A stretch of 64,000 nucleotides of DNA from NCBI RefSeq assembly GCF_026571515.1, contig NW_026854712.1, positions 1 through 64,000 on the forward strand. Direction: 5' to 3'. The DNA is from Ruditapes philippinarum (lineage: Eukaryota). Under the pieces are notes generated by a model that saw only the letters and a program-made list of their open reading frames with translations, did not search any database and was not told the DNA's origin. Of this stretch, positions 8,601 to 61,573 are shown one piece after another (positions within the stretch are counted from its first letter, which is position 1; every line of letters begins with the position of its first letter). A program made the position numbers and the translations under genes.

Positions 8601-11600
8601 TGTGACTGTAAAAGTGAGAATGAAACACTGCTTAACTTGTTTTGGGAATGTGATAAAATAAAGTCATTAATAGCAGATATTACTGAACATGTCAAATCAT
8701 TCAATGTAAACTTTGAGAGAGATTGCAAAACTTTTTATTTTGGGAAATACCAAGAAAATTTGAATGTTATAACATATTTTGCCTATAAACCAAAAGACAT
8801 ATTTATTTATATAAGAGATCATAATGTATTGATCCACATCTGGATGGGCTGAAAGGAAACTTAAAATAAGCATCATCAATTGTTAAAAACACAAACATTT
8901 TGGAAAATAAACTGTCAAATTGGTTCATGGTAAATTTCCCATGTGAAATATAATTATAAATATCAATGATTTGCTTATGATTAAATTTAAGATTGTTACA
9001 AGTGGATTAGTCTACACATATTCATTTTATTTTTCTAAGAAGCTCAAATATTTAAAAACAATAAAAAACAACAACAATATAACACAAAAACTCCGCTAGG
9101 AATGTATCATTTGGATATTCTTATAAAATATTGTTAGAAGTAAATAAAATGCAAAGTGATTCAAGAAGAACTTAATTGAATTTAAATAATTAAATATGTT
9201 GCATTTCATTGTAAGCCATTCAATTAAAAAAAGAAAATGGTATTGCAGTATTTGTATATCAAAATTGTTTTGTTAAATTGTATTGACGTAATTACTTTTA
9301 TCTTAATTGCACATAATATTAATGTTACATGTATATAACATGCATTTGTAATAAAAAATATAAGTGTTTACTAATGTCAGGCAAGTTAGTCTCATAAATG
9401 ATTTTAAGAATGTCAGTCTAAAGGTGTTAGATAAATGTTCCGAAATATATGTCTCTATATATAAGCTTCGTTTTAACACGAACGTACATCTTACTTCATT
9501 TTCCTTGGAGCATTAGTATCAAACATTGGTAATGATGATTAAGTATGCTGTTTTTATAGTACATTTTCACAAGGGTAGGAAGAATGTTATCTATAATCTA
9601 TAATTCTTACAATAGATTTTTATAAAAATATTCAATGGCTACCAATATATTCAATCACGATTATTACTTAGTAATTGGATATTCTCTCAACATTACCTTG
9701 TGCTGATATCCTGGTGCTAAGAATTATGTTTGTGGTTTTGGTAGGATATAAAGTCACGTATGTCTGTGGTATAGAAGGTGAGGTCCATATTGCTTCCTTT
9801 AATGGTTTAGTTATAACAACTGCGTTCAATATAGAATTGTATATTTATTTTAACTCATATGGTTGTAAGTGTCAATTCAAAGGACACTTATTTTTATTAA
9901 AATATGGTAAACAAGTTAAACAAAGAAAGGTGGCATTGAAAGAACGCAACCCCCACACGATCTAGCATCAAGGACCAGCGGTCAGGAACCCATGAGAGCC
10001 CCAAATAAAATAAGAACAGGACATAAGGCAGAGCACGGACAGGATACGTACTCAATAATACTTTAAAGGAAATAATAGTAACCGACAAGGAAATCAGATA
10101 CAATTTATTGAGTAATAGGCCCATAACGTAAAAGGCACATGGGAAGGGAACTTCAAGTACGGGAAAGGGGAGGGACAAAATTTAAAAAAAAGAAACTACG
10201 GGCAAAAGGGAATATACTAACCAAAGACGAGAAAACAACAAGGGACACAAACACAAGTGTCACCCAAACAGTATAAAACAACAAAGACATACATCTAAGG
10301 AATACAGAGGGGCGCCGTTTTGGAATTGTCAGCAACATAAGCATTGCTTGGCAGGTTTAACCGATCATTGGTGACCAAACCTCACTCTTAGCACCACCAT
10401 CGTCCTATAAACGAGGTTTTATTTAACGTCACATACGTTGATTTTTTTCTATTGTTATTGAATAATTTAACAATGTGTAATATTAGATAATGCTTTCAGC
10501 AAGACGCTAATTAAAATGTTTGAATAAAATAAATCTATGATAACTATAAACTTACGTGTTTGAAGAAAATATGGTTTCTTTGTTCTGTTCAAGGTAAATG
10601 AAAGAGTTGTAATGTTCCCATGTTTAGTAACATATCCATACCCTTTAACGTTACTTCGATGAATTTGACTTTTGAAAGTATCTAATAATAAAAAAAGAAA
10701 GAAAAACACGCACAAACAAGAAACGCACAAAATTCAAAGTTTGTCATTATGTTTGGTTGTATTTCTTTTCTACAAATGTCAGTTCTTTTACACCATATGT
10801 CTGCGTATTGTTTTTTTTATTTCAAGATCCATGAAAAGTACATTTATCTGTTATATGTTAAATCATGTCGTATCACAATTGGTGAAATGAACAAATATAG
10901 TGTACCATATTCAAAGATAATTGATATAATACAAACATATGCAAAGATCCAGATGTGCACTATTCTTTGTATGAAATGATAATTTTGTTTGGCGGCCATA
11001 TGGAAGAAATGTTTGTTAGTTGAGAAACGAGGAATTATCTTGTAAACGACTCACTTGAGTCAAGTATATGGATATAGTGCACATCTAGATCACCGTTATG
11101 CATTTACTTTTTTATCGATTCTTAATTTGTAATCCAAATGAAAAACTTACTATCAGATTTGAATATCACATCACTACGTATAATATTCGTCCATAATTGA
11201 CCAGTAATTTGATTCACTTCTACACTCAACGTGTCATTATAGGTAATCGGGAAACGTTGAAATTCAAAACATGTTTGCACATAAATGTTCCAACCAACAT
11301 ATCTTACATCCTCAAATACAACATTGGATATATTAGGATCTGAAAATAATGAGGAAAGTGTTTGCTTAAAGGTAAACTGTCCTAACCAGACAATTTGTAT
11401 CTCAGCTAAATATGTTGTTCATCTTTAAAACATGTTCTCAGTTGTCTCACAAGTTCATGTAAACCAACTAACCAACGCACTTGTATTGTCAACATATTGG
11501 ACACTTGACTTAAAATTGATGAAATAAGAAAAGTCTAGTAAGTCTACTTAATCTATTGTCGTCTGCAAATTTTGAATATTAAAATAGTTAATTTAATTTT

Positions 11601-14600
11601 GTCGATGAAACTCAAGACTTATTGAAACAGATTTACAATAAGTTCTCATTAGAAAAGAATGTAATTCTTTGTATTCTTATATCTATTCTGTAAAGAAAGT
11701 AAAATAACCCTGTTGGGCACACTCTGCAAACACTGGAAATTGCACAACCAAAATGCAATGCGATTGTCATATGGATGTCATTACTTTCCAGGAAAAACAC
11801 AAGCCTTAGGACTACAGTCTGTTTAATTAAACGGAAATAGCAGCAATACCTTCCCTTCCGAGAAAAAAAATCCTTAATAATCTCAATCTTATGAGCATCT
11901 GTATTGCCTCAAATAAAAACATAACAAAGGAACAACTGGTATAATAGTCTGACCTGTCACAATATAGATATTAATAAATGACATGTCGACTGTGTTTAAG
12001 AAAAACGTAATGAATACCATGTTTGAGACATTAAATCTTTTTTAAGGAAACATTAGTTCGTTTCCTGTTACTTTAATCATCCCCGTTTCAGTAATCATCC
12101 GTTTCTTTTTTCACGTCGGGTGGTGGGGGGGGGGGGTGATTACAACTAATAGAATCGGCATTTTAGGTTTGCATCAATATTCCAGAACACTTTGGTGCGC
12201 TTACAACAATGTCAATATCATATAAAAAAATGTGCTGCAAAGGCAAATATAAATATTATTTTGAAATTACAAAGAAAAGTGTGGCAACACGTTACTTCAG
12301 TGTTATTATATTTTTCTGGTCCACCGGTATCATTGATTCAAACACTTTAAGTATATATGAAATGAGTACCGCTCAAGTCGGTGCTAGGGGGCGTGAGGGA
12401 CGTTGCACTTTTCATTATCCCTCATGTACAGACTCAATCAAACCGAGTCAGTAATATCATGAAATATTGTTATGATTAATGCTTCCGATGGATCACACTT
12501 CATCCAGTACTTTATACCTTAACTTTATTCGTACTATTTCCTATGATACCATTAAATATGTTAAACTGACACTATGATTTGAAGCGATTATAGAATTTAT
12601 ACATTACATATCGACAAGCCTTAGAATCAAAGTCCCCGATAATATGAGAGAGCGTGCAGCTCAAACAGGGATAGAAGATAAGTAAATAGAAAACCTTTAC
12701 TGTTTAAAATTATGTTTATTTGTTGATAGTGTGTTCTCAGGGGGAGATTGTAAGTGTATAAGGGAAAACAAAAAAGAAAGAAATGTTATGTTAATCCCTG
12801 CCAGTTAATCCTTAAACCCAAATCAACCATACAAGCATACATGATATAATTGAACTAAAAATATGTCTCTCAGTATTAAATGATATAATATCGTAATGAA
12901 TTTTGAAATGTTGTATTATTAAACATGTTCGACCACCTAAAAAAATTACTGATGAATATTTTTTCTAACTCAACAAATAAAAATTAAAAATATACTATTT
13001 ATCATAAAACTTACATATTGCAGAAAAATCATTGTATACCTTTCGTACATAGTACTTTATACGCTGTGCTGCACATACTCCATACACCTTTTGTGTTTTT
13101 TTCATAAGCAAGACACTTTCCGTTGTTCTTGCTGCCTATTACACTAGTATCTGAAAGGGAAACGACACAGTTATGACGAATACATAAGAGTCACTGAACT
13201 ATTCACATTCGTGTCGCTATTGGTCAATTCTAAACTAAACAACAAAAGAAAAAAAAAATAGACAAAGATTTGTGTTCCCTCTGACGTTGATTAGTCCAAA
13301 CCTATTGGTTAATATATGGAAAAGTAGGTTTTTACAATAAGAATGTTAATATACTTTTCAAGCAAATAAGCATAAGAAAAATAAACGTTCACACACTTCT
13401 ATAAAAGTATTGAAACACTAATGATGCTTTAAAATGCTAATAAGTAAATTGTAACAAAGGTAAAACAACTTCAATTATGATCATGATACCCGTTTTCATT
13501 CTTTCATATATGGACATATAATCATCTCCTCCACCAGCTACCCAAGTTCCGTTATTAGGTGAAATATCACATTTAGGCAGATTTATGTTCTTGCTTGGTT
13601 TTTCGTTTAAACAAATACACTGCGACAAAGAAAACAAAAAGATCCAATTAATTCTTTTACAGCAATAAACGTTGTACTGAAAAAATGATATCAGTTTCTT
13701 ATCACATTGTAAAGTTAGCACTATATCGATATCAAATCACAATGATAAACGTTCTCTTGGATGTATCTATTTAATACAAACATATTGAATAAATGATATA
13801 GTTATGCTCATTAATTAAAACATTATTTCTAAACTTTTCACCCAATAAAATTTAAATAATTTAAATTATTCATCACACAAGACGATTTTTTATTATTTTT
13901 TGTTGTTACCATGTTGTTTATTACCTTGCCTTTGTTTAACCCGACATATTTTGTATAAGATTTATGACACATTGAAAAGCAAATGCCTGGGGTATTCATC
14001 AATACCGGCAATAAAACATCTGGTTCTGTATTGTTTAAAGAGCCACATCCTGTAATATGTAACAATAATTCATGTTTTAAACAGTATATGAGAGCATGTT
14101 CGCAATAAATCTTGACATTACTAAACTAGCATAAGCATCTTGGAGTATGTTTATCGATTTTATTTACATGTGTGACCATTCCTTTGTCAAAGAAACGGAA
14201 TTTCTTACAAGAAAAGCTATATGCTGGTAACAACCAAAAACAATACTATGACATCTTTTCTATTTCCTTTAATTCCTGAACATACTGACCATTGAGTTAT
14301 TACATACATTGAGAATTGTAAACAGGTTTTTTTTTGTTATATAATGGGACATAAGTAAATACGCAGATATTCTGAAGTGAAACAAAAATGTTTATTCCTA
14401 ATGACATACAAAAAAAATTAGAGAAATTATGAATCCCAATAGAACGTCTAAAAGAGCAAAATTGAAAATGTTATAGACTCGGTTTGATTGAGCCCGTTCA
14501 TGGACAATATTATTAAGTGCAAACTACCATCCACTCGCCTAGCACCAGCTTAAGCAAAATTCAAGATTAAACCATGAAATGACAAACATTTTAATTTAGA

Positions 14601-15310
14601 AACATCCGCTGATAATTATGTTAATACAGCGGTTATCATGGAACTTTCAATGTGACACGTTAGTGCCATTCCATGAAAACCGGCACATGGTCCCCAAATA
14701 ATAGAAAGCGTCTTCCCTAAACGAGAAAACAATGGGCGGAACTTAAAATGAATTTTTAAAGGCACATTTGTCTTTAATATCAGCTATTACGAAAAAATGT
14801 TTTTGCTTAAAATTTGTTCATTTTTTTCTAAGCTAAACTAAATTGTTTGTTGTTATTATGATATTGCTTGCAGGCAAATATTTAAAAAAAAAAGATACAA
14901 TGTGAATGCAAATGCTAATTACGAATTTAGAACACTTTGTTGATCCAAATCTTATTTGCAATACTAACAACTGTTTATTTATTTTTGCATTTTCAAAGTC
15001 AAACAATTCCAATTTAGAAAGAAAATAGCTGCAATGAAATAACAAATAATGAAAGAATCATCTACCATTCCAATTTCTTGCTTAATAAAATATGAATTTC
15101 AATTAGTCAATAAGTCATTACCAATGTATGCAAATGCTGTTTCTTTCATGTAATATCCAACCCATGCTTCTTCATTGTCATTTAGGTTAGAAACTTCTTC
15201 AACAATAATTGATGAATTATTTACATGTATCTTTGGTGCTGCCAAATTGCCTTTTCCCCTTGCATCTTGCCACGTAAACGATTCGTTTGATAGTACATAA
15301 TTGGCTGAAA
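2613..15310 (-). CDS. Gene A: multi-exon type I membrane receptor (CTLD-like/WSC ectodomain, Ser/Thr stalk, TM, ~200 aa tyrosine-rich tail), ~620 aa; first exon unresolved (near 17040-17320)
   Basis: Phase-compatible GT-AG exons read by hand: 15310-15122 (YVLSNESFTWQDARGKGNLAAP..AWVGYY..FAYIG), 14049-13925 (GC..NTPGICFSMC..YVGL), 13619-13490 (CIC..KCDISP..AGG..SIY), 13150-13040 (GKCLAY..WSMC..VLCTK), 11339-11151 (GWNIYVQTCF..LWTNIIRS), 10681-10556 (GYGYVTK), 9819-9697 and 6420-6289 (Thr/Ser-rich), 3550-3460 (TM: VSILVSVSVVILLLVAAIVIVIIMLKRR), 3210-2613 (tail, the real part of ORF 2613..3296). No stops; exon order and phases match genes B and C. Confidence 0.85.
3930..5540 (-). mobile_element. 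Decayed LINE (L1/Tx1-like) 3' fragment in gene A intron
   Basis: Minus-strand CDFC..YLFMDC..VQIFW resembles the C-terminal zinc knuckle of LINE ORF2; frameshifted and full of stops; boundaries approximate. Confidence 0.55.
5570..6075 (+). mobile_element. Mariner transposase C-terminal relic
   Basis: ttgcaggacaacgca (LHDNA-like) and ccaccatattctcca..ttggcaccctgcgatttttttctgttccca (PPYSPxLAPCDFFLFP). Confidence 0.75.
6620..8890 (+). mobile_element. Decayed L1/Tx1-like LINE ORF2 (reverse transcriptase region) in gene A intron
   Basis: Motifs RSRAKW..KKPTNYFCNLEK, DQTGFVKGRFVGEN, SGLKFNF, FFDYIWNG, LLHRILATN, LFWEC; many frameshifts and an internal deletion. Confidence 0.85.
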
Positions 15311-18730: not shown

Positions 18731-21700
18731 ATGTCAGGTGTCAAACAATTGATTTTGTTGCTTCTTTTTCGGATATGTGTTTCTACAGGTAATTATAACT
18801 ATTCAGTTAACCTAATTAGTTGCGTATCAAACATATTATATTAAGCAATTATGTAAATAACTTATGTAAAAAAGAATTGCTTGTACATGTATTATAAAGG
18901 TAGACCGTTTTAGGTTTTTCATAATTATAATAAACTATTTAATGTTCAGGAAATGTTTTGTCGTCCCTTTGTGCATGTTGTGTTTTCGAGGCAAAGAAAA
19001 ATAACAACGTGGTGGAGTAAATCATTTATCATAGTCTAGTGACAAATGATTGTCAGCATGAGAAAATGATGTTAAGAAATATACCTCGAATAAATTGATA
19101 ACTAGCTTTTAAAGTTCTTATTTCTGTCGTTAGCAGTCCTTCATACTTATACAATGATGTGTTGAACGAAACTAGTAAAAATATATAAACATTGTCATAT
19201 AAGTTGTTCATAAAATCATGCAACTAAGCGTATGAATTGTAAAACATCTTGAAAATCATGCAAGTAGTATCATGTGATGATAGCTTTTGCTGAAAAAAAG
19301 ATAGCCGATAGATGGTTGAATGGCTGTTGTACATACTGTTAATTTTACTATGTGACTAAGAAAATTGTATTGTTACATAGGTAACAGTACTTGTAGACTA
19401 GTTACGTGGAGCATTTCTAGCACACAAAGTAGCCGTCATTGGATTTTCGATTCAGCCTCTATTTTTTTCGAACTTAGGGTCATCATCAGAGCGACAATAA
19501 TCACCAGAAAATTTAGTTGTTTGTAACCAAAAGTGCTTTCCGGGTCTCAAACATTGTATGTTTGAATAGTCAAAAGGTAAACATCCGTTAGCAACGGAAG
19601 TTATTGCAGAGTAATATTTATCAAAATGAAACAAGCAGATGATTTAAACATACAAAGTTTATACATTTAGATCTGGTTGAAAATGTTCAGATCATTGAAG
19701 TATTTGTCTTGGGTAATAAAAGAAATAACACACAGGTTTGTAGACTCCTTCCGGGTGAAATTTTACCAACAAAATTATGTGCTTTTTATAACTATATTGT
19801 TTGTCGTTGTTAATATATTTTGCAAGTTTTATCAATACAATCTGTCTTGTTTTTCATAAGGAAGTGAGATGAGTAAAATATGTAAGTTTCAACAATCGAT
19901 CGCCCGATTTGAAACATGATATATCTCATAGCAGCAGGTGGGCTACTTATATTGAGTTCGCGTATCAAAACATTTTTTAACAATACAGATCACGACTTTT
20001 AAAATACTGACAGGTTTAAAAGGAAAATAAATAATTTTACAGATATTTTTTTTATCTATAATCGATAAGGTGGACAATAAAAGTGGGGGTAGCTTTAGCG
20101 AGTGATTTGTTAGTTTAAAGGTCAATTAAACCCTAAAATGTTACTATTTATATTGTTTAATAGCTGATTAAATTGTTGTTATGTTACAATTTACCAAAAG
20201 ATTTCTCATTTACCTTATATCTGAGCCATCTTTATTTTATTTTGCGTTTTGGAAATGAGTGCAGTTATAGTGATTTTGCATGGAAGTCAAAATACCATAT
20301 TGTTTGCTACTTGTACAGCAATTTGTTTCATATTCAATGCATTTCTTTCAGATGGTAAGCATCTGCAGGAATAACTTATATATACATACATGATTTTGAA
20401 TTTTGCGTTATTTATATGACTATTCTGGCACCTTAAAAAGTCTATTGTAGGTACATACTCGTACTATGTAGATACATTCTAAATTCCAGATTCATACAAT
20501 GAATTTATGACATGGGAGAAAGCAAAAGACAATTGCATGTTAGCAACACCGGAGTTTATTTATGATGGTGAAATCTTTACTGTAAATGATGATCAGAACT
20601 TGACAAATAGTATGGAAGGAAGGTGGCTTGGATACTACAAAAATATGCGGGGGTTTGAGTATTTTGGTAATACTATATTAATTTAAGTATTCTATCATCA
20701 TTTTTGATTCTATTGATTCTATATTTTATCATTCTTTTTGGGTTACTTTAAATCTCACATTTACGTCAAAATAAGAATCAATATATTCATAACTGACTTA
20801 ATATAAATATCATCAATTTGCTTGCTTATAAGGCCAATTTTTTTACATCAAATATGTCATTGCAGAAAAACAGTTTTGTATTATTTATAAGGTAATGAAG
20901 TTGATCATTAAAGTTTTTAACGTTAACATTTGTGGCTAAAAATGATGTTATTTGATTTCAAATACATTTAGGATGTATTAACTATCCGGAAATGTTTGGA
21001 ATTCCACCGAAACGAATTGGAAATAATTCACCAGGAAATTGTTTTTCCGTATGTTCACGAAGAGCAACATTTGTTGGACTAATGGGTCAAGAGGTAAAAA
21101 TAGTAATTACTAAAATGCTAAAAAATAGAAAGGTAGAGAATCCATAGTTTATTATAAGTTTTGTCATTGTATTAACACATCTAATTCTAATTATTTTGAT
21201 CTTATTACTAACCAGTAACCATTAATCGAATAAAACTTAAAACACTAAACCTAGTATGCGTAAAAACAAAATAATATTGATTTTAGATATCAAATGTTTT
21301 TAAATACATGGACATTATCAAGAGTCTAGTTTTTTTCAACTTTGTATTTCGCGCATCTCGGTTATATGACTTGTTAAAAAAGTTAAAATGTATCAGTATT
21401 TCATTTTATATTGTTTGATTTGAAATTACAGATATTTTGTGCTTTTACAGTGTTATTGTTTTAAAACGATCACAGCAGAAGAGAAAGTTGTTAGCAATGC
21501 GTCATGTAATGAATCATGTCCGCCACCATCTGAAGGTTTAGCTTGTGGGGGACAATCATTTATTTCTTTATATGTGGTTAATAAAAAAGGTAAGGAAGAT
21601 GTGCATAGGTGATAAATGTACAAAATATCATATACATCATAATAATATTTAGACAACAAAATGTTTAAATGATATGCGTATGCCCTTCAATGTATTTCAC

Positions 21701-24700
21701 CATATTATCTACTTCACTTGGGTAAATAACCCTCGCACTGAAATGTATAAAAGCATATTGATTTTATAAGGGTCCTATGAGAGTTTTAGTCTGTGTTTAA
21801 AAGTTGAAATGAACCTTTTGTGCAATTTAGAAATTATCTATAAAAGCAATACTAAGGATATGTTAATGTTCATCCATGCTAATCTACAGAAATAAGAAAC
21901 TTCGACGGGAACGATAGCTAAGGATGAGCATTAACATACTTAGTGTCCAGCTTTATTTGTCTTCATTAATATTCACTATATTTCTTCACTACCTGTCAAT
22001 TTTATGAACGCGGTTCTTAGAGGCACTATGAACAATAGAAGACGAGTATGAATGGAATCTAAATTGGTTCTTCTAAGGAAACCAACACATATAATTTTTA
22101 AGAAATACAGCGTTTTCATTGGATGACAAATAAAGCTGGACATCAATGGCCATTAAATTTTTGAGTTACAATAAAAGGAGATGATCGTCATTTGACATGT
22201 CATTATTCTTTAAACACACTAGTTATCAAGGGGGAGAATCACGCCATTCGTTACCCAAGCAAACAAGATGGCAGATGCAGCCGAAAAATTAGTTTTTTTC
22301 CTTTTTTTCCCTGAAATTAGTAATTTTCTTGTGTAAATGTACATATAATAATCTTCTTCACAATTTTCCGGGCACACAGGATTTAATTTCATGGTGTTTT
22401 GTCCCGTACTTCATCTGAAATGCGCGTCACCATAATAGATGCGAGAGAATTTTCCACAGGTTTGATCGTAATAACCTACGGCTTCTTCTCTCAAATTCAC
22501 TGTTTCGTTTACATATATGCTTATTGACTGAAACCGCTGACTTAAATAAGTTGTAATACGTCGTCATCTAAGCATTCATGACCATTCTGGCTAGATTTAC
22601 GCTCTAATAATAATATCGGGGCATTTTCCGGAAATGATAACGTATGGCGCACAAAATATCAATGATAACGTACGGCGCACAAAATATTAATGATAACGTG
22701 CGGCGCATTTTTCTTCTTGGTGGACTTCCATTTGTCCAGTCAGCTGATAATGAATTATTTGTATGTCGGAAATGATAGATATCTGAAAAAATGTTTGTCT
22801 GTTCAGAATTAAATAATTGAACAATGCTGCACCATTGGATATAAATATCTTTCTAGCTGGTGGCATAATAGATATTCGTTGTTAATATACTAACCTTTTT
22901 CTACCAATTAAAACACACATGTATAGTTTGAGATTATTTTTGTATAAAGAAAAGCCTCCACTTTCAATGAACATTGTATATTGTTGTCTTCACATTAATG
23001 TTCGCAATTATGTTCGTATCCCCTTGTCAGAAAGAAGAAACGCATTCAGCAGAGCAGATATTAAAAAGGTATGGACGGCTAGATATATTTTCTTTTCCGG
23101 TTATCATAAACGAAAGGAACGTCATAATTTGATCAAAACAATTACATGCAATTCATTAATTTGCCTATCATAATCTGGCGATACTTTATCTAAAATAATG
23201 TTCATACCACCAGAGGTGCCTACGTTAGCGCTCATATTTTGTGCGCCATACGTTCCATTTCCGGAAAATGCATCGATATTTCCATCACAGCGGTTATTCT
23301 AGCTATAATGGGCATCGATGCTTAGATGACGACATATTACAACTTTGTAAAGTCAGTGGTTACAGTTTATATACATATATGTAAATGAAACAGTGAATAT
23401 TAGGGAGGAAGCCGTACGTTATCACGATCAAACCGGTGGAAAATTATCTCGCTTCGATTCTGGTGACGCGCATTTCAGATGAAGTACGGGACAAAACATT
23501 ATGTAATAAAATCCTGTGTGCCAGGAAAATTGTGAAGAAGATTATTATATGTACCTTTACACAAGAACATCACGAGTTTTAGACAAAAAAGGGAAACACT
23601 AACTTTTCGGCTGCATCCGCCATCTTGTTTGCTTGGGTAACGAATGGCGTGATTCTCCCACGTGAGTTATTATATTGTTAAAACACTCACTTTATTTTGA
23701 TCTTTTATTGACTTTTTTCTTAAGGGAGTACATAATTTTAAAAATCATCATATCTTTACAAATTCAGTTCAAAACTATTTCCATGCCGACAATGAAACTG
23801 ATATAATTTATATAGTAACTGCCATATATTTCCTTTAAACATAGATTTGAAATTTCAATATATTTTATAAGGAACATGACACAACACAATCAGTTAAGAA
23901 GTCTATAAAACAAATCATATAAGCCATGATCGCTCCTATTACATTAGTTGATTATGTTCTTAAAAGCTTATAATTTGTTGTATTTCTAGCTTTCTATATT
24001 GCCTGCAATCAATGTGGCTTAAATCTCGTAATTATTAAGATGGCATCTTATCAACACGGATCCTGGACATTAAGATTTTTAAACATGTTTAAATATTTTT
24101 ACCATTTCAGTTCTAAACATCCGTAAGGTGTTTGGTCAAAATAAAAATAAAAGTAATTGCGTCAGGCTGGAAAGCGACAAGAAACTTTTGTGGGATCAGT
24201 GCGACTCTGCGTTACACAATAAATGCTATGATGGTAAATATTTAAAATCTTCAAGTAGTAAATAGGAAACTGAAGCACCATTGTCATCGATCCATATTTA
24301 AAATTCGGACAGTTATAGCACATGCCAAAATGTTTGGTACAAATATGTGCTCTATATACGCTTGTTATACAAACACATCTCCCTTTATATGAACTATTTG
24401 GTGCTTTATATGAACTATGTGGTGTTTTATATGACCTATTTGGTACTTTATATGAACTAATTGGTACATTTTTTTACATTTAACCTTTGAAAACCTTGTA
24501 ACTTGCAGTGTTCAATTTTAGTAACAATATTAAACAAATTCATAACCGTTCGATTGGAACAGGGTAAATTATAACAATATGTGACAATTATTTCGCTTGA
24601 ATATGTAAACTGACCCATAAAACGTCGTTAATTATATTTATTTTATTAATAATAACCAAAAATCTCTATACATATTTTAATGCAACTGTACCTTATGTAA

Positions 24701-27700
24701 AAGATGTTCAGGTTGTCAAAAACAGCCTAAAACTAAATGTTATGTCTAGAAATAATTGTGTATTCTGACTGATTACAGCAATGTACGATGCAATAATGCA
24801 TACATTACAACATGTCTTACATGATTCCATTTATGATCCCTAAATTATTTGTTGAACATTTCAGTTTTAATTTTTTTTGTCGTTTTATCTGATTTGTTTT
24901 GTAGTGATTTGTAGTTATGTCCTAATGTAAATTAAAAGCATTGATCTCATACTCCCATCAATTTTAGGAACAACAGCTTACGATGTGCCTGCTCCAACGA
25001 CAGGTCGGCAATATTTTCCATGGTATTGGGCAAATAACTTATGTTTTGGCAGCAATGTTCGACCATTTTTATATGAAAATGCTGTGAACTTTAACGGAAC
25101 AACTTTAGAGTCTTGGACAGGAATGTGTCGCAGTCTGTCAATCTTCACATTCTCAGGTATCCTTTAGTTTCAATATAGCGTTTTATTTAGTTTACCTTAG
25201 TATGCATTTCTGCGTTAAACCTGCGCTTGCAGGAATACATTTACGGAGGTGAAAGCATGCATCAATGGACACAATAACGCGATAACGTATCATTATTGTA
25301 CGTTCTTTATTATATGAACACAAGATAATCACAAAAGATTGATTTATGAAGAACATATATTTGGATTTTATATCTAAGATGAGCGTTAAATCATAAAAAG
25401 GCATAATTTTTGATAGGTTAATTGGTTAAAAAAATAAGCAAAAAGAGTCGAGCTATCAATTTATCTTTTATTTGACTTTTGTTCTCCTACCAGACATTTC
25501 CGTGCAAAGAATTTAACGAATCATTTAAGTTTTGTAATTTGTACCTGACGTCAAACTCACGCGTAAAATGCCTTGCAAAACCGGTAAAAAAACTTACAGA
25601 ATCCCTTATATTTTATCTAATGTCTTTGCTTGTGTGCCCCGGTATTAAATGCGTCCTTATTCATTAGCAGATGTTAATATATAAAATTTTCTTTTAGAAC
25701 CTATTATAGGAAACGTTCATTTGGAATACGGGTATTTGAAAAGATGTGATGCTTCTGATAAGTACGAACTTCATTTTACTAGAAACATGCAAGAACAAAA
25801 GAAATCGCTGTGCAAAAGCGATAGACAAACATCAAAAGAGCAACACAAAACCGGTGATGGTGGAAATTCAGGTACAACTTTATATAAAATAGTTGTTGTA
25901 ATTCAAATTTAATAAGAAAAATATATGAATAAAAATTTAATTGATATAAAAGACAAACCGCTTATGAAGTTTTTGTCTTTTTCATAAAGCTAAAATGATT
26001 ATAGACAACAAACATAATAAGGACACTGTAGATAATCATTTTTATTATAAAAACTATACATGCACCTTTACAAAGAATAAAAAAGACGTTAATTTTTTGG
26101 AAAGTCTTAATGTAAGGAACCCAGCCTTAATTAAACGATCAACTAAGTTATGATACGAGGGTTGTCCAAACAACTCGTGCACTGCAGTTATTGTCGTGAG
26201 AGTTATTGATAGAAAATCATGAATTATATATCACGTGAAGGGGAAATCTGTCTCAAATAAGAAAACAAAAGGAAAAGCCGTGTAACTGAAGTGTCATGAA
26301 AACAAATCGTCAAACACTTACCTTGGTAACGAAATAGCGGCGCACGACAAAAAAAGTGGGTTAGTTCATGACTTTGTTGCACGACAGTTTTCTTTAAACA
26401 CTGCACATTAATGTCAAAATTCGGGGAAAAGTGTGTGTACGTATTCCTGACATCCAAAGAAAAAATGACGTCATTTGCCTTATTATAACGGTCGTAAACA
26501 AACATTTCTGTGTGGTCGTCAATACTGTAATTACGTGAAAATTTCAGTCGCTAAACGTCTGGAAATACGGACGATCATAACATTTGGGCAAGTATTGGAA
26601 AAACACCGACAGATACCTACAAAGAATTTAAAAGGGCAAGGGTGACAACTTCAGTGTAACGAAGGCTGGTTTTTGAATGGCACAAATGCTCTGTAGAGGG
26701 TCGAGAGGAGGTAGATGATGACAACCGGTCAGGCAAACGTTCGTCCATAATGCCGGCGCATGCGTCGAGGGTTGTCCAATATACTCATGCACTGGTGGAT
26801 GTACGTTGCATAAGATAAAAAAAAAAACTAAAAATGCTTTCCATCAATCATTCCTCTATTGACAGTAAAACAAATTATGACATAATAAGCAAATGCCACT
26901 TTACAAGCGACAAAAAATTAATACAACCACAGTAATGAACTAACCCATCTTTTGTCGTGCACCGGTATTACGTTACTAAGGTAACTTAATGACAATTCTT
27001 TTTCACAACACGCCGGTTGCACGGCTTTTTCTGATGTTTCCCCTTCAAATGATATATAATTCATGTTTTTTTAATAATAACTCTCACGACAATAACTGCA
27101 GTGCACGAATTTTTTGGACAACCCTCGTATAATATATCTTTATTCAAGGGTATTATATATCATGAGAGTTTTGTTACTTCTTGACCACTGACCTTTTGAC
27201 CACTGACCATTTGACTATAGACCGATTGAACACTAAACTACTACAACCTTTCTCGAAAGAGCCATTTGTATACTTGACTGCGTGTTAATCTGTGTCCAAT
27301 CTGAACAATACCATGGTAATGTTTAAACTTTTCAATATTACCTCTCTGATCATTCCTTGCCAACTTGTCGTTTAACCGATTCATTTCAAAACCATCTTTT
27401 TTCCTCTTCTACCTTATTAAGTAATAAAATGTATTAATATTTTTCATTTCATTGCAAAAAAAGGGTTCCAACGTATACGTAAAGTTTAAAGTTATAGAAA
27501 AGTGTAAAAATGCGTCTGCTATACGCTACTTTTAAACCGGTACCGAGTAGATATTTTACTCGTGATTCCGCGGTGGACGCCGCTGTCATTCTTAAGCTAT
27601 CTTACCTGATGGTTTGCCCAGACTGTAGTTGTTTCTTAAGTCTATTATAATCGTGAACCGCATTGTTAAATCCTCATAACGAAACATTCGAAACAGAAAT

Positions 27701-28817
27701 ATGAACGAGGTCAGAACAACCATTAATTTAAGGATATCTTTTGTGTGTGCAACATTTGTTCTGCCATGGACACAATCGAGCTCTGGTGCGGATGTAACAT
27801 ACATTAAAAACGAACCAGAAGACTACCATTACAATAACAATTTGGCATCGCACAGGACAGTGAGACAAGAGCCAAATCGTAGTTAAACAATCATCATTTA
27901 CATACATTACATTTGAATATCAAGTAGAGTTTTAATATTTAGAAAGAAGCAAATGTTGCACACAGATACATTCTGTTACTTTATAGCAAAATAGTTTGCT
28001 GTAACAATTATATTTGCTTTTCTATCATTGTATATTTAAAGATATTATTTGCTATACAAATATCATTCATGTTTTTATTTTCAGATACAGATGTAGGTTT
28101 AATTGTAGGATCAATAGTTTCTGCTACCCTGCTTATTGTTACCATAGTGATAATTCTTGTTCTAGGCAAGCGGTAAGGTCATTCTCCTAAGAATGTTAGT
28201 TTTTACATGCATTATTTTTCTGTCTCTTCAACATTAAGGGGCTCGGGTCACATAATTTTCCATATATTCGTGTGTGTGCGTGCCTCTGTGTTTCTGTTTG
28301 AAGAAGTGTACTTCATGTCCGGCTCATAACCTCTGCATGCTTTATGGGATTAAAAAATCAATACAAATGACCACCATCAGTATACAATATTCAGCGTGCA
28401 AAACCCTGATCTAATGTCAAGACAACTTAAGAGGATTAAATTTGGTGAATTTGTTATTATATCGAATAGTACAGTTGAAGGTCTTTTTAGATCTGTAATG
28501 TCTGCATGTCAAATGATTCATGAAATGTTGTAAGCGTATACATTTTTTATAGGAGGATACTCTTAGTTCAATGCTGCAAGACAAAAGACCAGACACTGAG
28601 TTTTACCAACCATCAGGGTGCTAATGAGCATGTTGTAACAGGAAGAAGGAATTCAAACGAGCTCGCTTTGCCCGGCCAAATTAGTGGTTCCTCATACCAA
28701 AATGTTGAAGTACCATCTAGGGAGATCACTGATCCGCATACATATTGTGCACTTGAACATATCGGACGGAGAACAAATAATATGGAAAGTGAATACAGTC
28801 AACTGTCGTTATCTTGA
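18731..28817 (+). CDS. Gene B: multi-exon type I membrane receptor (signal peptide, CTLD-like/WSC ectodomain, TM, ITIM-bearing tail), ~445 aa
   Basis: Exons: 18731-18788 (MSGVKQLILLLLFRICVST), 20490-20666 (TWEKAKDNCMLATP..RWLGYY..FEYFG), 20972-21093 (GC..NNSPGNCFSVC..FVGL), 21451-21589 (CYC..SCNESC..ACGG..SLY, completing an 8-Cys WSC pattern), 24111-24233 (NCVRL..WDQC..NKC), 24968-25156 (PWYWANNLCF..SWTG), 25698-25871 (EYGYL..KSLC), 28085-28172 (TM: VGLIVGSIVSATLLIVTIVIILVLGKR), 28553-28817 (tail to TGA). All GT-AG and in frame; the exon 2 acceptor is ambiguous. Confidence 0.85.
21943..22141. repeat. Small inverted-repeat element (MITE-like)
   Basis: tgtccagctttatttgtc .. gacaaataaagctggaca. 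Confidence 0.65.
22227..23664. mobile_element. Non-autonomous DNA transposon (MITE/foldback) with ~450 bp TIRs and 6-bp TSD AGTTAT, in gene B intron 4
   Basis: caagggggagaatcacgccattcgttacccaagc.. is inverted at ..gcttgggtaacgaatggcgtgattctcccacgtg; agttat flanks both ends (22221-22226, 23665-23670). Confidence 0.9.
26156..27127 (+). mobile_element. Mariner-derived non-autonomous element with TA TSD, in gene B intron 7
   Basis: TA|cgagggttgtccaaa..tttggacaaccctcg|TA. Inverted arms ~200-250 bp. Internal relic of the transposase N-terminal HTH (EKTPTDTYKE..FEWHK..EGREEVDDDNRSG, ~26560-26745). Confidence 0.9.
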
Positions 28818-40500: not shown

Positions 40501-43500
40501 GGCTGCAAGGCTGCCAAATTCAGGCTGCTAGGCTGCCACACTGCCAAATTCACGAACATCTAAACATTAACTTATGTCTTCCCTATCAAATTATTAAAGA
40601 CATTTTTTTATGTTTTGCGCTGATAAAGGCATATAGCCAAAACGTTTGCGAATGAGAAATATTGATAAAATAAAATGAGTATTTTCATTTTCCGTATTTT
40701 CACTGTAAAAAATATTTTTCACTGCAGTGAAAAATATTTTCTGTATTTTCATTGGTGTCTTGTCGGACTACTTTCTTCTAAATTGAGCCAATACACAAAA
40801 TTTAAGGGGAAATCTTTCAAATTGTAATACATGTAACAAAAAGAATATAATTAACAGAAAATTCTAGGTTTTTCTAGAAATGCAGGATTTTATTCCATCT
40901 TGTGGTATGAAAATTATCATATTTCACTCGTCGCTACCGCCACCCAAATATTTAATTTCATAAGACTCGATGAAATAGATCCTGTATTTAATGAAAAAAA
41001 ACTTGAATATCCTCCATATTTATGACTATTTAAAACAAAGAAGATTTTCAACAGGATAAGATTTATTGCTTTCCTTACTGTATTTAATGATTTATTGTAA
41101 TCATGCAACTTTTATGAGCATTTCTGGGATTAGTTTAAAATAGCATCAACAAGACCTCTCATTTCAAACCGACACAACCATTTTAAGACTTCAGATGTAC
41201 AAGTGTGACCGTGACTCTTATGCTGGAGACGCTACATGTCGTTAACATATCTATGCTAAGTCCATTCACAAATGACAGTATTATTGACTGGAACCGACAA
41301 TGTTGCACTTTTATTTTGAGCTTATACATGTCGCTGAAAACCCGACTCTTGCGCATGACATATTTACATATAGCCATTGGGCCCAACACACTAATGTCAA
41401 GTGATTTTAAAATCCATTCGGGAATGACAGATTTGTTGACTGAACATTATCATCAATGCACTTGAATGAGAAAAAAAATCATAATGAAGTAAGACCTGTG
41501 TCTGTAAATATTGACGAAGAAACAAATATTGTTGAAATCAAGTAAGACCTTGACCTTGAAGCCATTTACCTACTTGTCGCACGTGACACATGGTCATATT
41601 GTCAAACCTATAAATGTCAAGTTCTGTTGAAATTAACCTAGGAAAGACAAAATAATTGTTGGCTGGACATTATCATCAACGCATTATTATGAATTATTCA
41701 TATCATAACTGGACGTATAGCTGAGATATTGACCTTTCTACTAGGACCTAATTCTTAAAGGCGTCTCGATCAGTTCCGTCCATGAACACCGAGCCTGCAT
41801 TTTTTCAAAATTTCCGAATTGGGCTTTCTTTAGGGATTCTGTTTTTCTCTATTTCGTTGTTAGCATGTCCAACATATTTGTGCAAAGTTTAAAATCCATA
41901 AAGAAATAACTGAATTGTTGACTGGACCAAAAATCAGCGCACTTTAATGTAAGAATTACTTTCGAATCGAAGTGTGACATTGACCTTTCAGTTAAAGAAC
42001 GACAAATTCAATCATAATTCGCTTCACATTTATGCAGACATATTTCAACATTCTTCTATAAATAACAAAGTTATGGATCAGACGGATGCAATGACGAATG
42101 GTGGGACGGAACATTTAAACTGTAGTTTCGATTTGATAAAAATCGAAGATAGCTTGTCGTGTAGATAACCAATGTTCAGTAATATAGACATATAGATGCC
42201 TTATATGTTTAAGTATTTTGATTAAAAATCGTACTTAGTATAATATACATATTATAAGCCTGTAATCTATAAAATATCTTTCAAAATTATTGTAAAACAA
42301 TAAGAAAAATAAAAGAATAAAATAAATATGTTAAACTTTGTATACTTCCTTAATGAGGAATGACGCATGCACAAGAGTATTGCTAAATACCAATGCGTGG
42401 TGGATAACAGAGCCAGTCTATGTTACAATTATTCGAGAATCCGCCTTAAACTTTCGGAAAAAACATAATTTCACCATTTATAGATCTAGAATTTTAAAAT
42501 ATATTTCACTGATACTCAATGCCAAATTTCTAGCTTTCGGTGCATCTCTGAGAAGAATATTTTAAAAATATTTCACTTTTGGGGTATATTTTAGCTCAGT
42601 CTAAGTTTCAGAAGAAATTTGAATGTACTCAACAAGTTATACGCAATTCAAATAAAGCGAAGCGTTTCAAAACTACATTTAGATAAGGCTACGGAAACCC
42701 ATAAGTGATCAACGTTTCGCTTGACACTCATTAGTTTGTCTATACCAACGTATCTATATTGGAAAATTGTTTCATTAAATATTCATTTCTTACATCATTG
42801 CAGTTACAGCTTATTATGTCCTTTCAAATGAAACTGCCTCGTGGGACAATGCAAAAGGTAGGGGAAACTTTGCAACACCAACAATTCAAGGGAATAACTC
42901 TTCTTGGTTTATTATCAATATAACATCTGACCTAAATGAAAATGAAACAGCATGGGTTGGATATTATAAGAAGGAAACAGCCTTTGCTTACATTGGTAAG
43001 TTCTTATTATATATCATGTCATTACTTGTACATAAACAATAGTTGGTAATTGCTTGTTTTGCCATGCCTTAACAGCAGTATTCTTGAAAAAATGAAGATT
43101 ATGTACGTATTATCAATGAAATCAAACACTTTTTAAAGTATCATGAACAACAACCTTCACGTTTATAAAAAAGATATATAAAAGATATCGGAGTATATAA
43201 AAAGATAGAGCAAAAATATAAGATAAAACCATTGACCATTACTTTTGACCTTGATCTTGAAATGAGCGTCTGGGTTTAATTTACAATTATTATCATCATC
43301 TTCATATATTGAATATGTTACCGGGGCGTCTCCTCAATGCTTTCTCTGATTTTTTATTCTTTTTTTTGCGATCGATATTTTGTCAAAGTTGGACAGCATT
43401 TGATAATCATGAACGTTATTCCAACGGGTCATAAGTAAGAAGATAAGTAAGAAAGGATTACTTGATAAGCCTTTTGATCTTGAACTGTAACATACTAAAT

Positions 43501-60790: not shown

Positions 60791-61573
60791 GTTTGTGTGT
60801 GTGTTATATAGATTATATAGTGAACTTTAACAATCTTCTTGTGAAAAACCACTAGTCCAATTTCAACCAAACTTGGCAGGATTGTTTCTTGGGTGAAGGG
60901 CTTCCAAAGTTGTTCAAAGAATTTCATTCCATGCAGAAATCTGGTTGCCATGGCAACCAAAAGGAATTATAAGAATAAATTAAAAAAATCTTCTTGTAAA
61001 GACCCAAAAGGCCTAGAGCTTAGATATTTTGCATAAGGCATTGTCTGGTAGACCTCTAACAAGATTGTTCAAATTATAGCCCTGGGGTCAAAATTGGTGC
61101 CACCGCAGCATCTGCGATGCGGNNNNNNNNNNNNNNNNNNNNNNNNNNNNNNNNNNNNNNNNNNNNNNNNNNNNNNNNNNNNNNNNNNNNNNNNNNNNNN
61201 NNNNNNNNNNNNNNNNNNNNNNNNNNNNNNNNNNNNNNNNNNNNNNNNNNNNNNNNNNNNCTTAAACAATCTTCTTGTGAAAAACCACTAGTCCAATTTC
61301 AACCAAACTTGGCAGGATTGTTTCTTGGGTGAAGGGCTTCCAAAGTTGTTCAAAGAATTTCATTCCATGCAGAAATCTGGTTGCCATGGCAATCAAAAGG
61401 AATTATAAGAATAAATTTAAAAAATCTTCTTGTAAAGACCCAAGAGGCCTAGAGCTTAGATATTTTGCATTAAGCATTGTCTGGTAGACCTCTAACAAGA
61501 TTGTTCAAATTATAGCCCTGGGGTCAAAATTGGCGCCACCGCAGCATCTGCGATGCGGTGGCATATAGCGATT

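What the first reader, a model, noticed from the sequence alone, without database searches (positions are those of the whole stretch)
20490..24233. WSC domain inserted inside a C-type lectin-like fold
In B, exon 2 reads like the first half of a CTLD (TWEKAKDNC-LATP..WLGY, matching W-x-x-A-x-x-x-C, LA, WIG). An 8-Cys WSC domain follows (exons 3-4), and only then the CTLD second half (NCVRL..WDQC..NKC, exon 5). The WSC sits where the Ca2+/sugar-binding long loop normally lies; no EPN/QPD or WND motif is present. A and C share the layout. Inference: ligand binding has moved to the inserted WSC module on a CTLD scaffold.
Basis: partly seen in the sequence, partly recalled or inferred. Interest (0 to 1): 0.82.

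Follow-up and report, generated by a model that had tools for sequence, protein, structure and literature searches.

The report
WSC domain splitting a clam lectin fold
A Manila clam membrane receptor gene carries a two-exon WSC sugar-binding module exactly where ordinary clam C-type lectin genes have an intron in their long loop, which is unusual, though which lectin half pairs with which is unsettled.

Summary
Window 20490-24233 holds exons 2-5 of gene B. This gene is Ruditapes philippinarum LOC132740835, annotated "uncharacterized protein", 444 aa. Its nine exons reproduce database protein P0011 exactly.

- **WSC:** exons 3-4 are a true 8-Cys WSC domain (Pfam 30.0 bits against a cut-off of 27.8).
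- **Lectin halves:** exons 2 and 5 miss Pfam Lectin_C. As family profiles with the WSC removed, they align colinearly over 100 columns to a profile of 20 canonical clam C-type lectin-like domains (CTLDs). hhalign gives P=4e-6 and score 37; 200 column shuffles reach at most 24.
- **Insertion site:** the exon 2/3 intron has the same place and phase as the long-loop intron of ordinary two-exon clam CTLD genes.
- **Motifs:** EPN, QPD and WND are absent.

- Exons 6-7 look like a second split lectin unit.
- Genes A and C lack both the exon-2 and the exon-7 cysteine but keep those of exons 5 and 6.
- The one partly usable AlphaFold model completes the lectin fold with exon 7, not exon 5.

I lean to cross-paired halves with the WSC in the hinge. 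No confident structure was obtained, and function is untested.

The family has at least 80 exon-2 copies in this genome. First readers noted the same nesting on other pieces of this genome.

The parts
18731..18788 (+). Gene B exon 1: start codon and signal peptide (MSGVKQLILLLLFRICVST). It ends in phase 1.
   Evidence: tblastn of P0011. Exact splice model reproduces P0011.
20490..20666 (+). Gene B exon 2 (aa 20-78), the N-terminal half of a CTLD-like sequence. It holds a beta1-like Y-x-E-F, W28-x-x-A-x-x-x-C35, LATP, W65-L-G-Y and GFEYF(G). Phase 1-1, donor G|GTAATA.
   Evidence: hhalign of e2 alone against the clam CTLD profile scores 29-30, P 2-4e-5, template columns 20-77.
20972..21093 (+). 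Gene B exon 3 (aa 79-119), first half of the WSC domain (C80, C102, C106). It starts in phase 1 and ends in phase 0.
   Evidence: Pfam WSC covers residues 77-153 of P0011 at 30.0 bits. Splice model.
21451..21589 (+). Gene B exon 4 (aa 120-165), second half of the WSC domain (C120, C122, C138, C142, C151, CGG motif). It starts in phase 0 and ends in phase 1.
   Evidence: The internal intron falls near Pfam WSC position 45, where other clam WSC genes are also split.
21590..24110 (+). Intron 4 (2.5 kb). It is enlarged by a repeat with inverted arms at 22226-22600 and 23293-23665.
   Evidence: the repeat finder. RNA reads pile up only on the repeat pieces.
24111..24233 (+). Gene B exon 5 (aa 166-206), the C-terminal half of a CTLD-like sequence. 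It holds C182-V-R-L, W193, C196 and C204, with C196 to C204 8 apart; from memory that matches canonical CTLDs. Phase 1-1.
   Evidence: hhalign of e5 alone scores 18.7-19.4, P 0.002-0.003, template columns 108-137. Two RNA reads of run X20 join e4 to e5 in a close paralogue.
24968..25156 (+). Gene B exon 6 (aa 207-269), a second, weaker N-half-like unit (QYF, W225-x-x-A-x-x-x-C232, W256-T-G). It ends 11 residues after WTG in phase 1.
   Evidence: hhalign of e6 against the CTLD profile scores 17-18.5, P 0.007-0.013, in register. The e6 HMM also hits the e2 regions of P0005.
25698..25871 (+). Gene B exon 7 (aa 270-327): three predicted strands (279-286, 291-297, 304-309) ending in C308, then the stalk. 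It is the candidate C-half that completes exon 2.
   Evidence: pLDDT 83-88 in the second AlphaFold model. VIA-align CTLD matches span model residues 14..~312. It has no sequence similarity to CTLDs (score 10.8-11.7).
28085..28172 (+). Gene B exon 8: the transmembrane helix.
   Evidence: Predicted helix 338-362.
28553..28817 (+). Gene B exon 9: the cytoplasmic tail with SSYQNV and SEYSQL (ITIM-like, S-x-Y-x-x-V/L) and the stop codon.
   Evidence: Sequence of P0011. Splice model.
10545..15299 (-). Paralogue A, exons e2-e7: e2 15299..15120, e3 within the open frame 14125..13841, e4 13619..13497, e5 about 13163..13038, e6 11343..11161, e7 10664..10545. It has no Cys at the C35 or C308 positions. 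Cys is kept at the C182, C196, C204 and C232 positions. Its WSC has 6 Cys.
42815..55190 (+). Paralogue C, exons e2-e7: e2 42815-42997, e3 43825-43905, e4 44161-44271, e5 about 45504-45620, e6 53033-53233, e7 55098-55190. It shows the same cysteine pattern as A. Its WSC has 7 Cys.

Best explanation
Gene B is Ruditapes philippinarum LOC132740835. It belongs to a large venerid-clam family of type-I membrane receptors.

**Exon layout (shown).** The ectodomain is built from phase-1 exon modules in this order:
- CTLD N-half (e2)
- a two-exon WSC cassette (e3-e4)
- CTLD C-half (e5)
- a second N-half-like unit (e6)
- a second C-half-like unit (e7)

**Origin (inferred).** The WSC cassette was shuffled into the phase-1 intron that splits the long-loop region of ordinary two-exon clam CTLD genes. 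In the chain, the WSC therefore sits inside a CTLD long loop.

**Folding (inferred, about even odds).** The four halves do not pair in order.
- e2 folds with e7, giving a C35-C308 disulfide.
- e5 folds with e6, giving C204-C232 plus the local C182-C196 disulfide.
- The result is two intertwined CTLD-like domains, with the WSC as an extra domain in one of the two hinges.

**Function (inferred).** EPN/QPD and WND are absent, so neither CTLD-like unit can bind sugar through the classical Ca2+ site. The WSC domain is the most likely glycan-binding part. The ITIM-like tail would pass the signal on.
For: **Gene model.**
- The nine exons reproduce P0011 exactly. e2, e3+e4, e5, e6 and e7 are all phase 1-1.

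**WSC.**
- Pfam scores 30.0 bits, above the gathering score of 27.8.
- Its internal intron lies near profile position 45, as in many other clam WSC genes.

**CTLD halves.**
- hhalign of e2+e5 against the clam CTLD profile scores 37, P 4e-6, over 100 colinear columns.
- W-x-x-A-x-x-x-C, the WIG motif and all four cysteines are in register.
- Controls score 9.5-24.
- After the family's own exons, the best HMM hits among 2356 open frames were all true CTLD frames, though none was individually significant.

**Intron homology.**
- Two-exon clam CTLD genes on contig C5473 end their first exon at ...W-T-S-(G with G|GT in phase 1. Gene B exon 2 ends at ...E-Y-F-(G with G|GTAATA in phase 1.
- At least nine Lectin_C matches in this genome end at profile positions 61-67.
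- An intron downstream of WIGL is a known CTLD intron site (PMC514892).

**Cross pairing.**
- A and C lack both the C35 and the C308 equivalents but keep the C204 and C232 equivalents.
- All seven units that have C35 also have C308.
- 20 of 30 exon-2 copies in the genome lack C35, so this is the commoner state among the 30 best-scoring copies.
- The AlphaFold alignment placed the CTLD C-halves on e5. The model still gave e5 a pLDDT of about 41 and e7 83-88.

**Family.**
- At least 80 exon-2-like exons occur in this genome.
- 21 of 30 have a WSC exon within 1.5 kb downstream.
- Relatives were found only in Ruditapes and Mercenaria.
Against: - Pfam Lectin_C finds nothing at E<=10.
- There is no confident structure. 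AlphaFold on the family alignment alone gave mean pLDDT 33. The second model reached only 46 overall, used an alignment seeded with CTLDs, and Foldseek found nothing in it.
- I could not see the VIA-align residue pairs, only the ranges.
- By sequence, e2+e5 is the best CTLD. e7 has no detectable similarity to a CTLD C-half (score 10.8-11.7), and e6 is weak.
- The cysteine co-loss rests on A and C, which probably share a single ancestral event.
- C has an odd cysteine count.
- The MAFFT placement of CTLD C-halves on e5 was unstable. It moved onto the WSC when WSC rows were added.
- The fragment competition test gave no answer.
- Gene B was almost silent in four RNA runs.
- No binding data exist.
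Confidence: 0.5

Rival explanations
1. In-order pairing.
- e2 and e5 fold together into one canonical four-cysteine CTLD (C35-C204, C182-C196).
- The WSC is a true domain-in-loop insertion in its long loop.
- e6+e7 form a separate, compact two-cysteine CTLD-like domain (C232-C308).
For: - e2+e5 gives the best and only full-length match to the CTLD profile (score 37.2, 100 columns). e2+e7 aligns only through e2, and e6+e7 scores 16.9.
- In B, all four canonical cysteines sit in e2/e5. From memory, their spacings resemble canonical CTLDs, with C3 to C4 8 apart.
- In-order pairing is the expected ancestral state of a tandem duplication.
- MAFFT alone aligned 20 CTLDs across the WSC onto e2 and e5.
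Against: - In A and C, this model leaves C204 and C232 unpaired in two different domains. Yet both are conserved, and the C35-less type is 20 of 30 exon-2 copies.
- AlphaFold gave e5 low confidence even though CTLD rows were aligned to it, and completed the fold with e7.
Confidence: 0.32
2. The flanks are not CTLD halves at all. On this reading, e2, e5, e6 and e7 are lineage-specific small cysteine-bearing modules, and their likeness to CTLD motifs is convergent or chance. The protein would then be simply a WSC receptor with novel flanking modules.
For: - No Pfam Lectin_C hit.
- No PDB sequence hit outside the membrane helix.
- The Atlas feature search gave only low scores of 0.77-0.78, with PAN as well as Lectin_C clusters.
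- With the seven-sequence alignment, hhalign scores fall to about 19-20.
- Single sequences score at most 13 bits against the clam CTLD HMM.
Against: - Both halves map independently to the correct halves of the CTLD profile, with all key residues in register. Their scores are far above shuffled, reversed and WSC controls.
- The intron shares place and phase with real clam CTLD genes.
- The 50 best VIA-align hits are all CTLDs.
Confidence: 0.12
3. Gene-model artefact. On this reading, the exons belong to different genes or the WSC exons are not spliced in, so no single protein carries the nested layout.
For: - Gene B is almost unexpressed in the four RNA runs read.
- P0011 is an automatic prediction.
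- Some family models are clearly incomplete: P0002 lacks e6, P0016 lacks e2 and P0017 lacks e7.
Against: - Three genes in the window show the same exon order with compatible phases.
- 21 of 30 other loci have a WSC exon just downstream of e2.
- Mercenaria proteins have the same contiguous layout.
- Two RNA reads join e4 to e5 in a close paralogue.
Confidence: 0.04

Closest known systems
Canonical C-type lectin-like domains, for example the two-exon clam CTLD genes on contig C5473 (L009) and selectin, CD72 and tetranectin CTLDs in the PDB
   Same: - They share beta1, W-x-x-A-x-x-x-C, the WIG motif, C2...W..C3...C4 and the intron after the first long-loop hairpin in phase 1.
   Different: - The family falls below the Pfam threshold.
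- The Ca2+ site residues EPN/QPD and WND are missing.
- The long loop is interrupted by an 87-residue WSC domain.
- Most family members lack the C1 cysteine.
- The halves may pair out of order.
Polycystin-1 (PKD1) and relatives, which carry both a WSC and a C-type lectin domain in one ectodomain (from my own knowledge, not tested here)
   Same: Both have WSC and CTLD modules in the extracellular part of a membrane protein.
   Different: In polycystin-1 the two domains are separate, consecutive modules. Here the WSC lies between the two halves of a CTLD.
[quoted passage not shown]
   Same: The long loop acts as a hinge that reaches into a partner CTLD, and the Ca2+/sugar motifs are lost.
   Different: - The snaclec swap is between two chains and moves only the loop.
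- Here the proposed swap is within one chain, exchanges whole C-terminal halves, and carries a WSC domain in the hinge.
Multi-WSC proteins of the same clam genome (contigs C2098, C12578, C720, C7740)
   Same: They have two-exon WSC cassettes split near Pfam position 45, the likely kind of donor for the cassette.
   Different: They are tandem WSC arrays. No neighbouring CTLD halves were looked for in them.

Membership tests
C-type lectin-like domain (Pfam PF00059 Lectin_C) | A match to the family HMM above the gathering score | tested here: not met
   There was no Lectin_C hit at E<=10 for single exons or for P0001, P0002, P0005 and P0006, and none at E<=1 for P0011, P0013, P0014 and P0016. Single sequences score at most 13 bits against a clam CTLD HMM.
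C-type lectin-like domain (Pfam PF00059 Lectin_C) | Remote homology by profile-profile comparison, colinear over the whole domain | tested here: met
   hhalign of e2+e5 scores 36.9-37.2, P about 4e-6, probability 86-87%, over 100 columns. The shuffle maximum is 23.9. With a shallower alignment the score falls to 19.8.
C-type lectin-like domain (Pfam PF00059 Lectin_C) | WIGL-type motif and the four conserved cysteines (C1 in alpha1, C2 in beta3, C3 after beta4, C4 in beta5) | tested here: met
   Gene B has W65-L-G-Y, C35, C182, C196 and C204 in register with 20 clam CTLDs. A, C and 20 of 30 exon-2 copies lack C1. The disulfide connectivity was not tested.
C-type lectin-like domain (Pfam PF00059 Lectin_C) | The CTLD three-dimensional fold | tested here: inconclusive
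Ca2+-dependent C-type lectin (carbohydrate-recognition domain) | EPN or QPD in the long loop and WND in beta4 (Ca2+ site 2) | tested here: not met
   None of EPN, QPD, WND, EPS, EPD or QPN occurs in P0011. The beta4 position reads L-W-D-Q-C.
WSC domain (Pfam PF01822) | An HMM match above the gathering score over the full profile, and eight cysteines | tested here: met
   P0011 residues 77-153 match profile positions 1-82 at 30.0 bits against 27.8, E 6.3e-7. The eight cysteines are listed. P0002 (27.2 bits) and P0016 (19.8 bits) fall below the cut-off. A has 6 cysteines and C has 7.
ITIM-bearing inhibitory immune receptors | A cytoplasmic (S/I/V/L)-x-Y-x-x-(I/V/L) motif that recruits SH2 phosphatases | not testable with these tools
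   SSYQNV and SEYSQL are present in the tail of P0011. Phosphorylation and recruitment cannot be tested here.

The most novel reading that the evidence does not exclude
The ectodomain may be a single-chain, domain-swapped pair of C-type lectin-like domains: N-half I, WSC, C-half II, N-half II, C-half I. The WSC domain would be carried in one hinge. I found no described example of this chain topology in the CTLD superfamily. It would be used by an expanded family (at least 80 exon-2 copies) of tyrosine-motif receptors in venerid clams.
Probability: 0.45. Interest if true: 0.8.

Novelty: new variant of a known kind. Interest (0 to 1): 0.62.

Why it matters
CTLDs and WSC domains are both common glycan-recognition modules, but in the architectures I know of they stand as separate beads on a string. 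A WSC placed in the CTLD long loop would be a natural example of domain-in-loop engineering on a very well-studied scaffold. That loop normally makes the Ca2+/sugar site.

If the halves are cross-paired, it would also show that a tandem duplication of a split domain can settle into an intramolecular swap.

The family is large, clustered and lineage-specific, and it carries ITIM-like or multi-tyrosine tails. That makes it a candidate immune receptor repertoire in a commercially important clam. It is annotated only as "uncharacterized protein".

Tried and rejected
- **Pfam on single exons and full proteins:** only WSC was found.
- **PDB sequence search with the family profile:** only the membrane helix matched.
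- **ESM Atlas feature search of residues 20-207 with WSC excluded:** scores were 0.77-0.78, with PAN and Lectin_C clusters mixed. This is below any useful level.
- **AlphaFold with the 12-sequence family alignment:** mean pLDDT 33, unusable.
- **Foldseek on the second model:** nothing at E<=0.001.
- **Complex prediction competition of e2, e5 and e7 fragments:** no answer. The score was 0.00, the alignments were not used and the fragments were poorly folded. This is no evidence either way.
- **Read laying on four RNA runs:** gene B is nearly silent. Reads fall mostly on intronic repeats, and only two reads cross e4-e5, probably from a paralogue.
- **Protein searches:** three word-index searches and the full HMMER search found only Ruditapes and Mercenaria members. 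Proteins for A and C were not recovered.
- **MAFFT placement of CTLD C-halves:** adding WSC rows moved them onto the WSC, so I do not count MAFFT placement as evidence.
- **e7 against e5 and e7 against the CTLD profile:** no similarity.
- **Gene-by-gene cysteine census of the 80 paralogues:** it could not be done. I did not try to read the letters by another route.
- It was rerun with coordinates only.
- **Spliced model:** it was never typed or sent joined. Exons were searched by reference, and the identical database entry P0011 was used for whole-protein steps. Joined or WSC-deleted alignments were built only inside scripts from session files.


Full report
**What is there**

The window is AT-rich animal DNA. 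A full HMMER search with exon 2 by reference found eight proteins. The best are from the venerid clams Ruditapes philippinarum and Mercenaria mercenaria, and all are named "uncharacterized protein".

One of the proteins found later, P0011 (LOC132740835, 444 aa), matches the window's exons nearly throughout by tblastn. A script found GT/AG splice sites that reproduce it exactly:
- e1: 18731-18788
- e2: 20490-20666
- e3: 20972-21093
- e4: 21451-21589
- e5: 24111-24233
- e6: 24968-25156
- e7: 25698-25871
- e8 (membrane helix): 28085-28172
- e9 (tail): 28553-28817

The window is therefore Manila clam, and the finding covers exons 2-5 of this gene. The spliced model was never typed or sent joined. 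Exons were searched by reference, and the identical database entry served for whole-protein steps.

**Check of the observation**

Every quoted peptide is present. Exons 3-4 are a real WSC domain. Pfam scores 30.0 bits against a cut-off of 27.8, over the full profile, with eight cysteines. EPN, QPD and WND are absent. Genes A (minus strand, 15299..10545) and C (plus strand, 42815-55190) have the same exon order.

**Are the flanks lectin halves?**

Pfam Lectin_C finds nothing, and neither does a PDB sequence search. I therefore built a comparison set from the clam's own genome. It holds 20 intron-less canonical CTLDs found with PF00059.

Family profiles of 11 units with the WSC columns left out were compared with that CTLD profile by hhalign:

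| Query | Score | P | Aligned region |
|---|---|---|---|
| e2+e5 | 36.9 | 4.6e-6 | 100 colinear columns |
| e2 alone | 30.2 | 2.6e-5 | N-terminal half, template columns 20-77 |
| e5 alone | 19.4 | 0.002 | C-terminal half, template columns 108-137 |

In the e2+e5 alignment, beta1, W-x-x-A-x-x-x-C, the WIG motif and all four cysteines are in register.

Controls:
- The reversed profile scores 14.5.
- 200 column shuffles give 11.8 +/- 2.4, maximum 23.9.
- The WSC exons score 9.5-9.9.

A shallower seven-sequence alignment gives only about 19-20, so the signal depends on family diversity. In a reverse HMM search of 2356 open frames, the best non-family hits were all true CTLD frames, though none was individually significant.

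**Gene structure**

All ectodomain modules are phase 1-1. Two-exon canonical CTLD genes on contig C5473 end their first exon at ...EGxFxW-T-S-(G with G|GT in phase 1. Gene B exon 2 ends at ...RGFEYF-(G with G|GTAATA in phase 1. At least nine Lectin_C matches in this genome stop at profile positions 61-67. An intron downstream of WIGL is a known CTLD intron site (PMC514892).

The WSC is split near Pfam position 45, as are many other clam WSC genes. This fits a two-exon WSC cassette shuffled into the long-loop intron of a CTLD gene.

Exon 6 ends 11 residues after its own W-T-G motif, again in phase 1. It shows weak N-half similarity. The gene therefore reads: N-half, WSC, C-half, N-half, C-half.

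**Which halves pair?**

By sequence, e2+e5 is the best CTLD. Two observations point the other way.

First, the cysteine pattern:
- A and C have no cysteine at the C35 position (e2) or the C308 position (e7).
- They keep the C182, C196, C204 (e5) and C232 (e6) positions.
- All seven units that have C35 also have C308.
- 20 of 30 exon-2 copies in the genome lack C35.
- In-order pairing would leave two conserved cysteines unpaired in different domains. Pairing of e2 with e7 and e5 with e6 satisfies all of them.

Second, the AlphaFold result:
- A run seeded with the 20 CTLDs had their C-halves aligned on e5.
- It still gave e5 a pLDDT of about 41, but 81-86 for e2 and 83-88 for e7.

These are weak lines of evidence. 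The model is poor overall (mean pLDDT 46), and Foldseek found nothing in it. I saw only ranges, not residue pairs. A and C probably share one ancestral loss. The family-only model failed, and the fragment competition gave no answer.

**Family and expression**

A profile of exon 2 finds at least 80 copies in this genome, in clusters. 21 of 30 have a WSC exon within 1.5 kb downstream. No relatives were found outside Ruditapes and Mercenaria.

Gene B is nearly silent in four RNA runs. Two reads join e4 to e5 in a close paralogue.

First readers noted the same nesting on other pieces of this genome. Those notes are unchecked and are not counted as support.

**Comparison with what is known**

The long loop between beta2 and beta3 normally holds E/Q-P-D/N, and beta4 holds W-N-D. 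The CTLD termini lie close together. Snaclecs swap the long loop between chains (PMC6468738). Polycystin-1 has WSC and CTLD as separate modules (my own knowledge).

Literature searches turned up no report of a WSC, or any other domain, nested in a CTLD long loop.

**Limits**

- As a result, the gene-by-gene cysteine census could not be done.

**Verdict**

This is a new variant of known kinds, of moderate to high interest.

Noticed in passing
window:21590-24110: Intron 4 of gene B holds a repeat with inverted arms at 22226-22600 and 23293-23665, 86-89% complementary. RNA reads from all four runs pile up on pieces of it, with many mismatches and loose ends, so related copies elsewhere are transcribed.
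   Followed up: partly
genome-wide (G000), e.g. contigs C3599, C2145, C10388, C10426, C6433: At least 80 exon-2-like exons occur in tandem clusters. The family is one of the larger lineage-specific receptor expansions in this clam. 20 of the 30 best-scoring copies lack the alpha1 cysteine.
   Followed up: partly
window:13497-14125 (-) and window:43777-44316 (+): The WSC domains of A and C have both lost the 7th and 8th cysteines (the C142 and C151 positions of B), which suggests that these two form a disulfide. C has gained an extra cysteine four residues after the GG motif, which gives it an odd total.
   Followed up: partly
window:769-981 (+) and window:32545-33222 (-): There are further family-like pieces: an exon-6-like fragment (35% identity to P0011 residues 236-295) and a tail-like exon similar to the long tyrosine-rich tails of P0013 and P0014. 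They may belong to more genes or pseudogenes of the cluster.
   Followed up: no
window:2628-3242 (-): The tail exon of gene A resembles the long multi-tyrosine tails of P0013 and P0014. The short tail of gene B carries ITIM-like motifs. Neighbouring paralogues therefore have contrasting tails.
   Followed up: no
window:46000-50000, ORF 48819-49208 (-): There is strong negative GC skew, and a 130-aa open frame lies on the minus strand here. I took it for part of a retroelement by eye but did not test that. It lies inside the long intron of gene C between e5 and e6.
   Followed up: no
window:60646-61786 (-): Three related stretches with (CA)n-type microsatellites flank an N gap at 61123-61260. 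The gap was left as it is.
   Followed up: no
L009 (G000:C5473:340193-343453) and the table: Clam CTLD genes fall into at least two intron classes. One class is split just before the WIG motif (matches starting at Pfam positions 37-42). The other is split after the first long-loop hairpin (matches ending at positions 61-67).
   Followed up: partly
P0002, P0016, P0017 (Ruditapes) and P0018 (Mercenaria): Annotated family models lack single modules: P0002 has no e6, P0016 has no e2, and P0017 and P0018 have no e7. These are either isoforms or prediction errors. If they are real, they would carry orphan half-domains.
   Followed up: no
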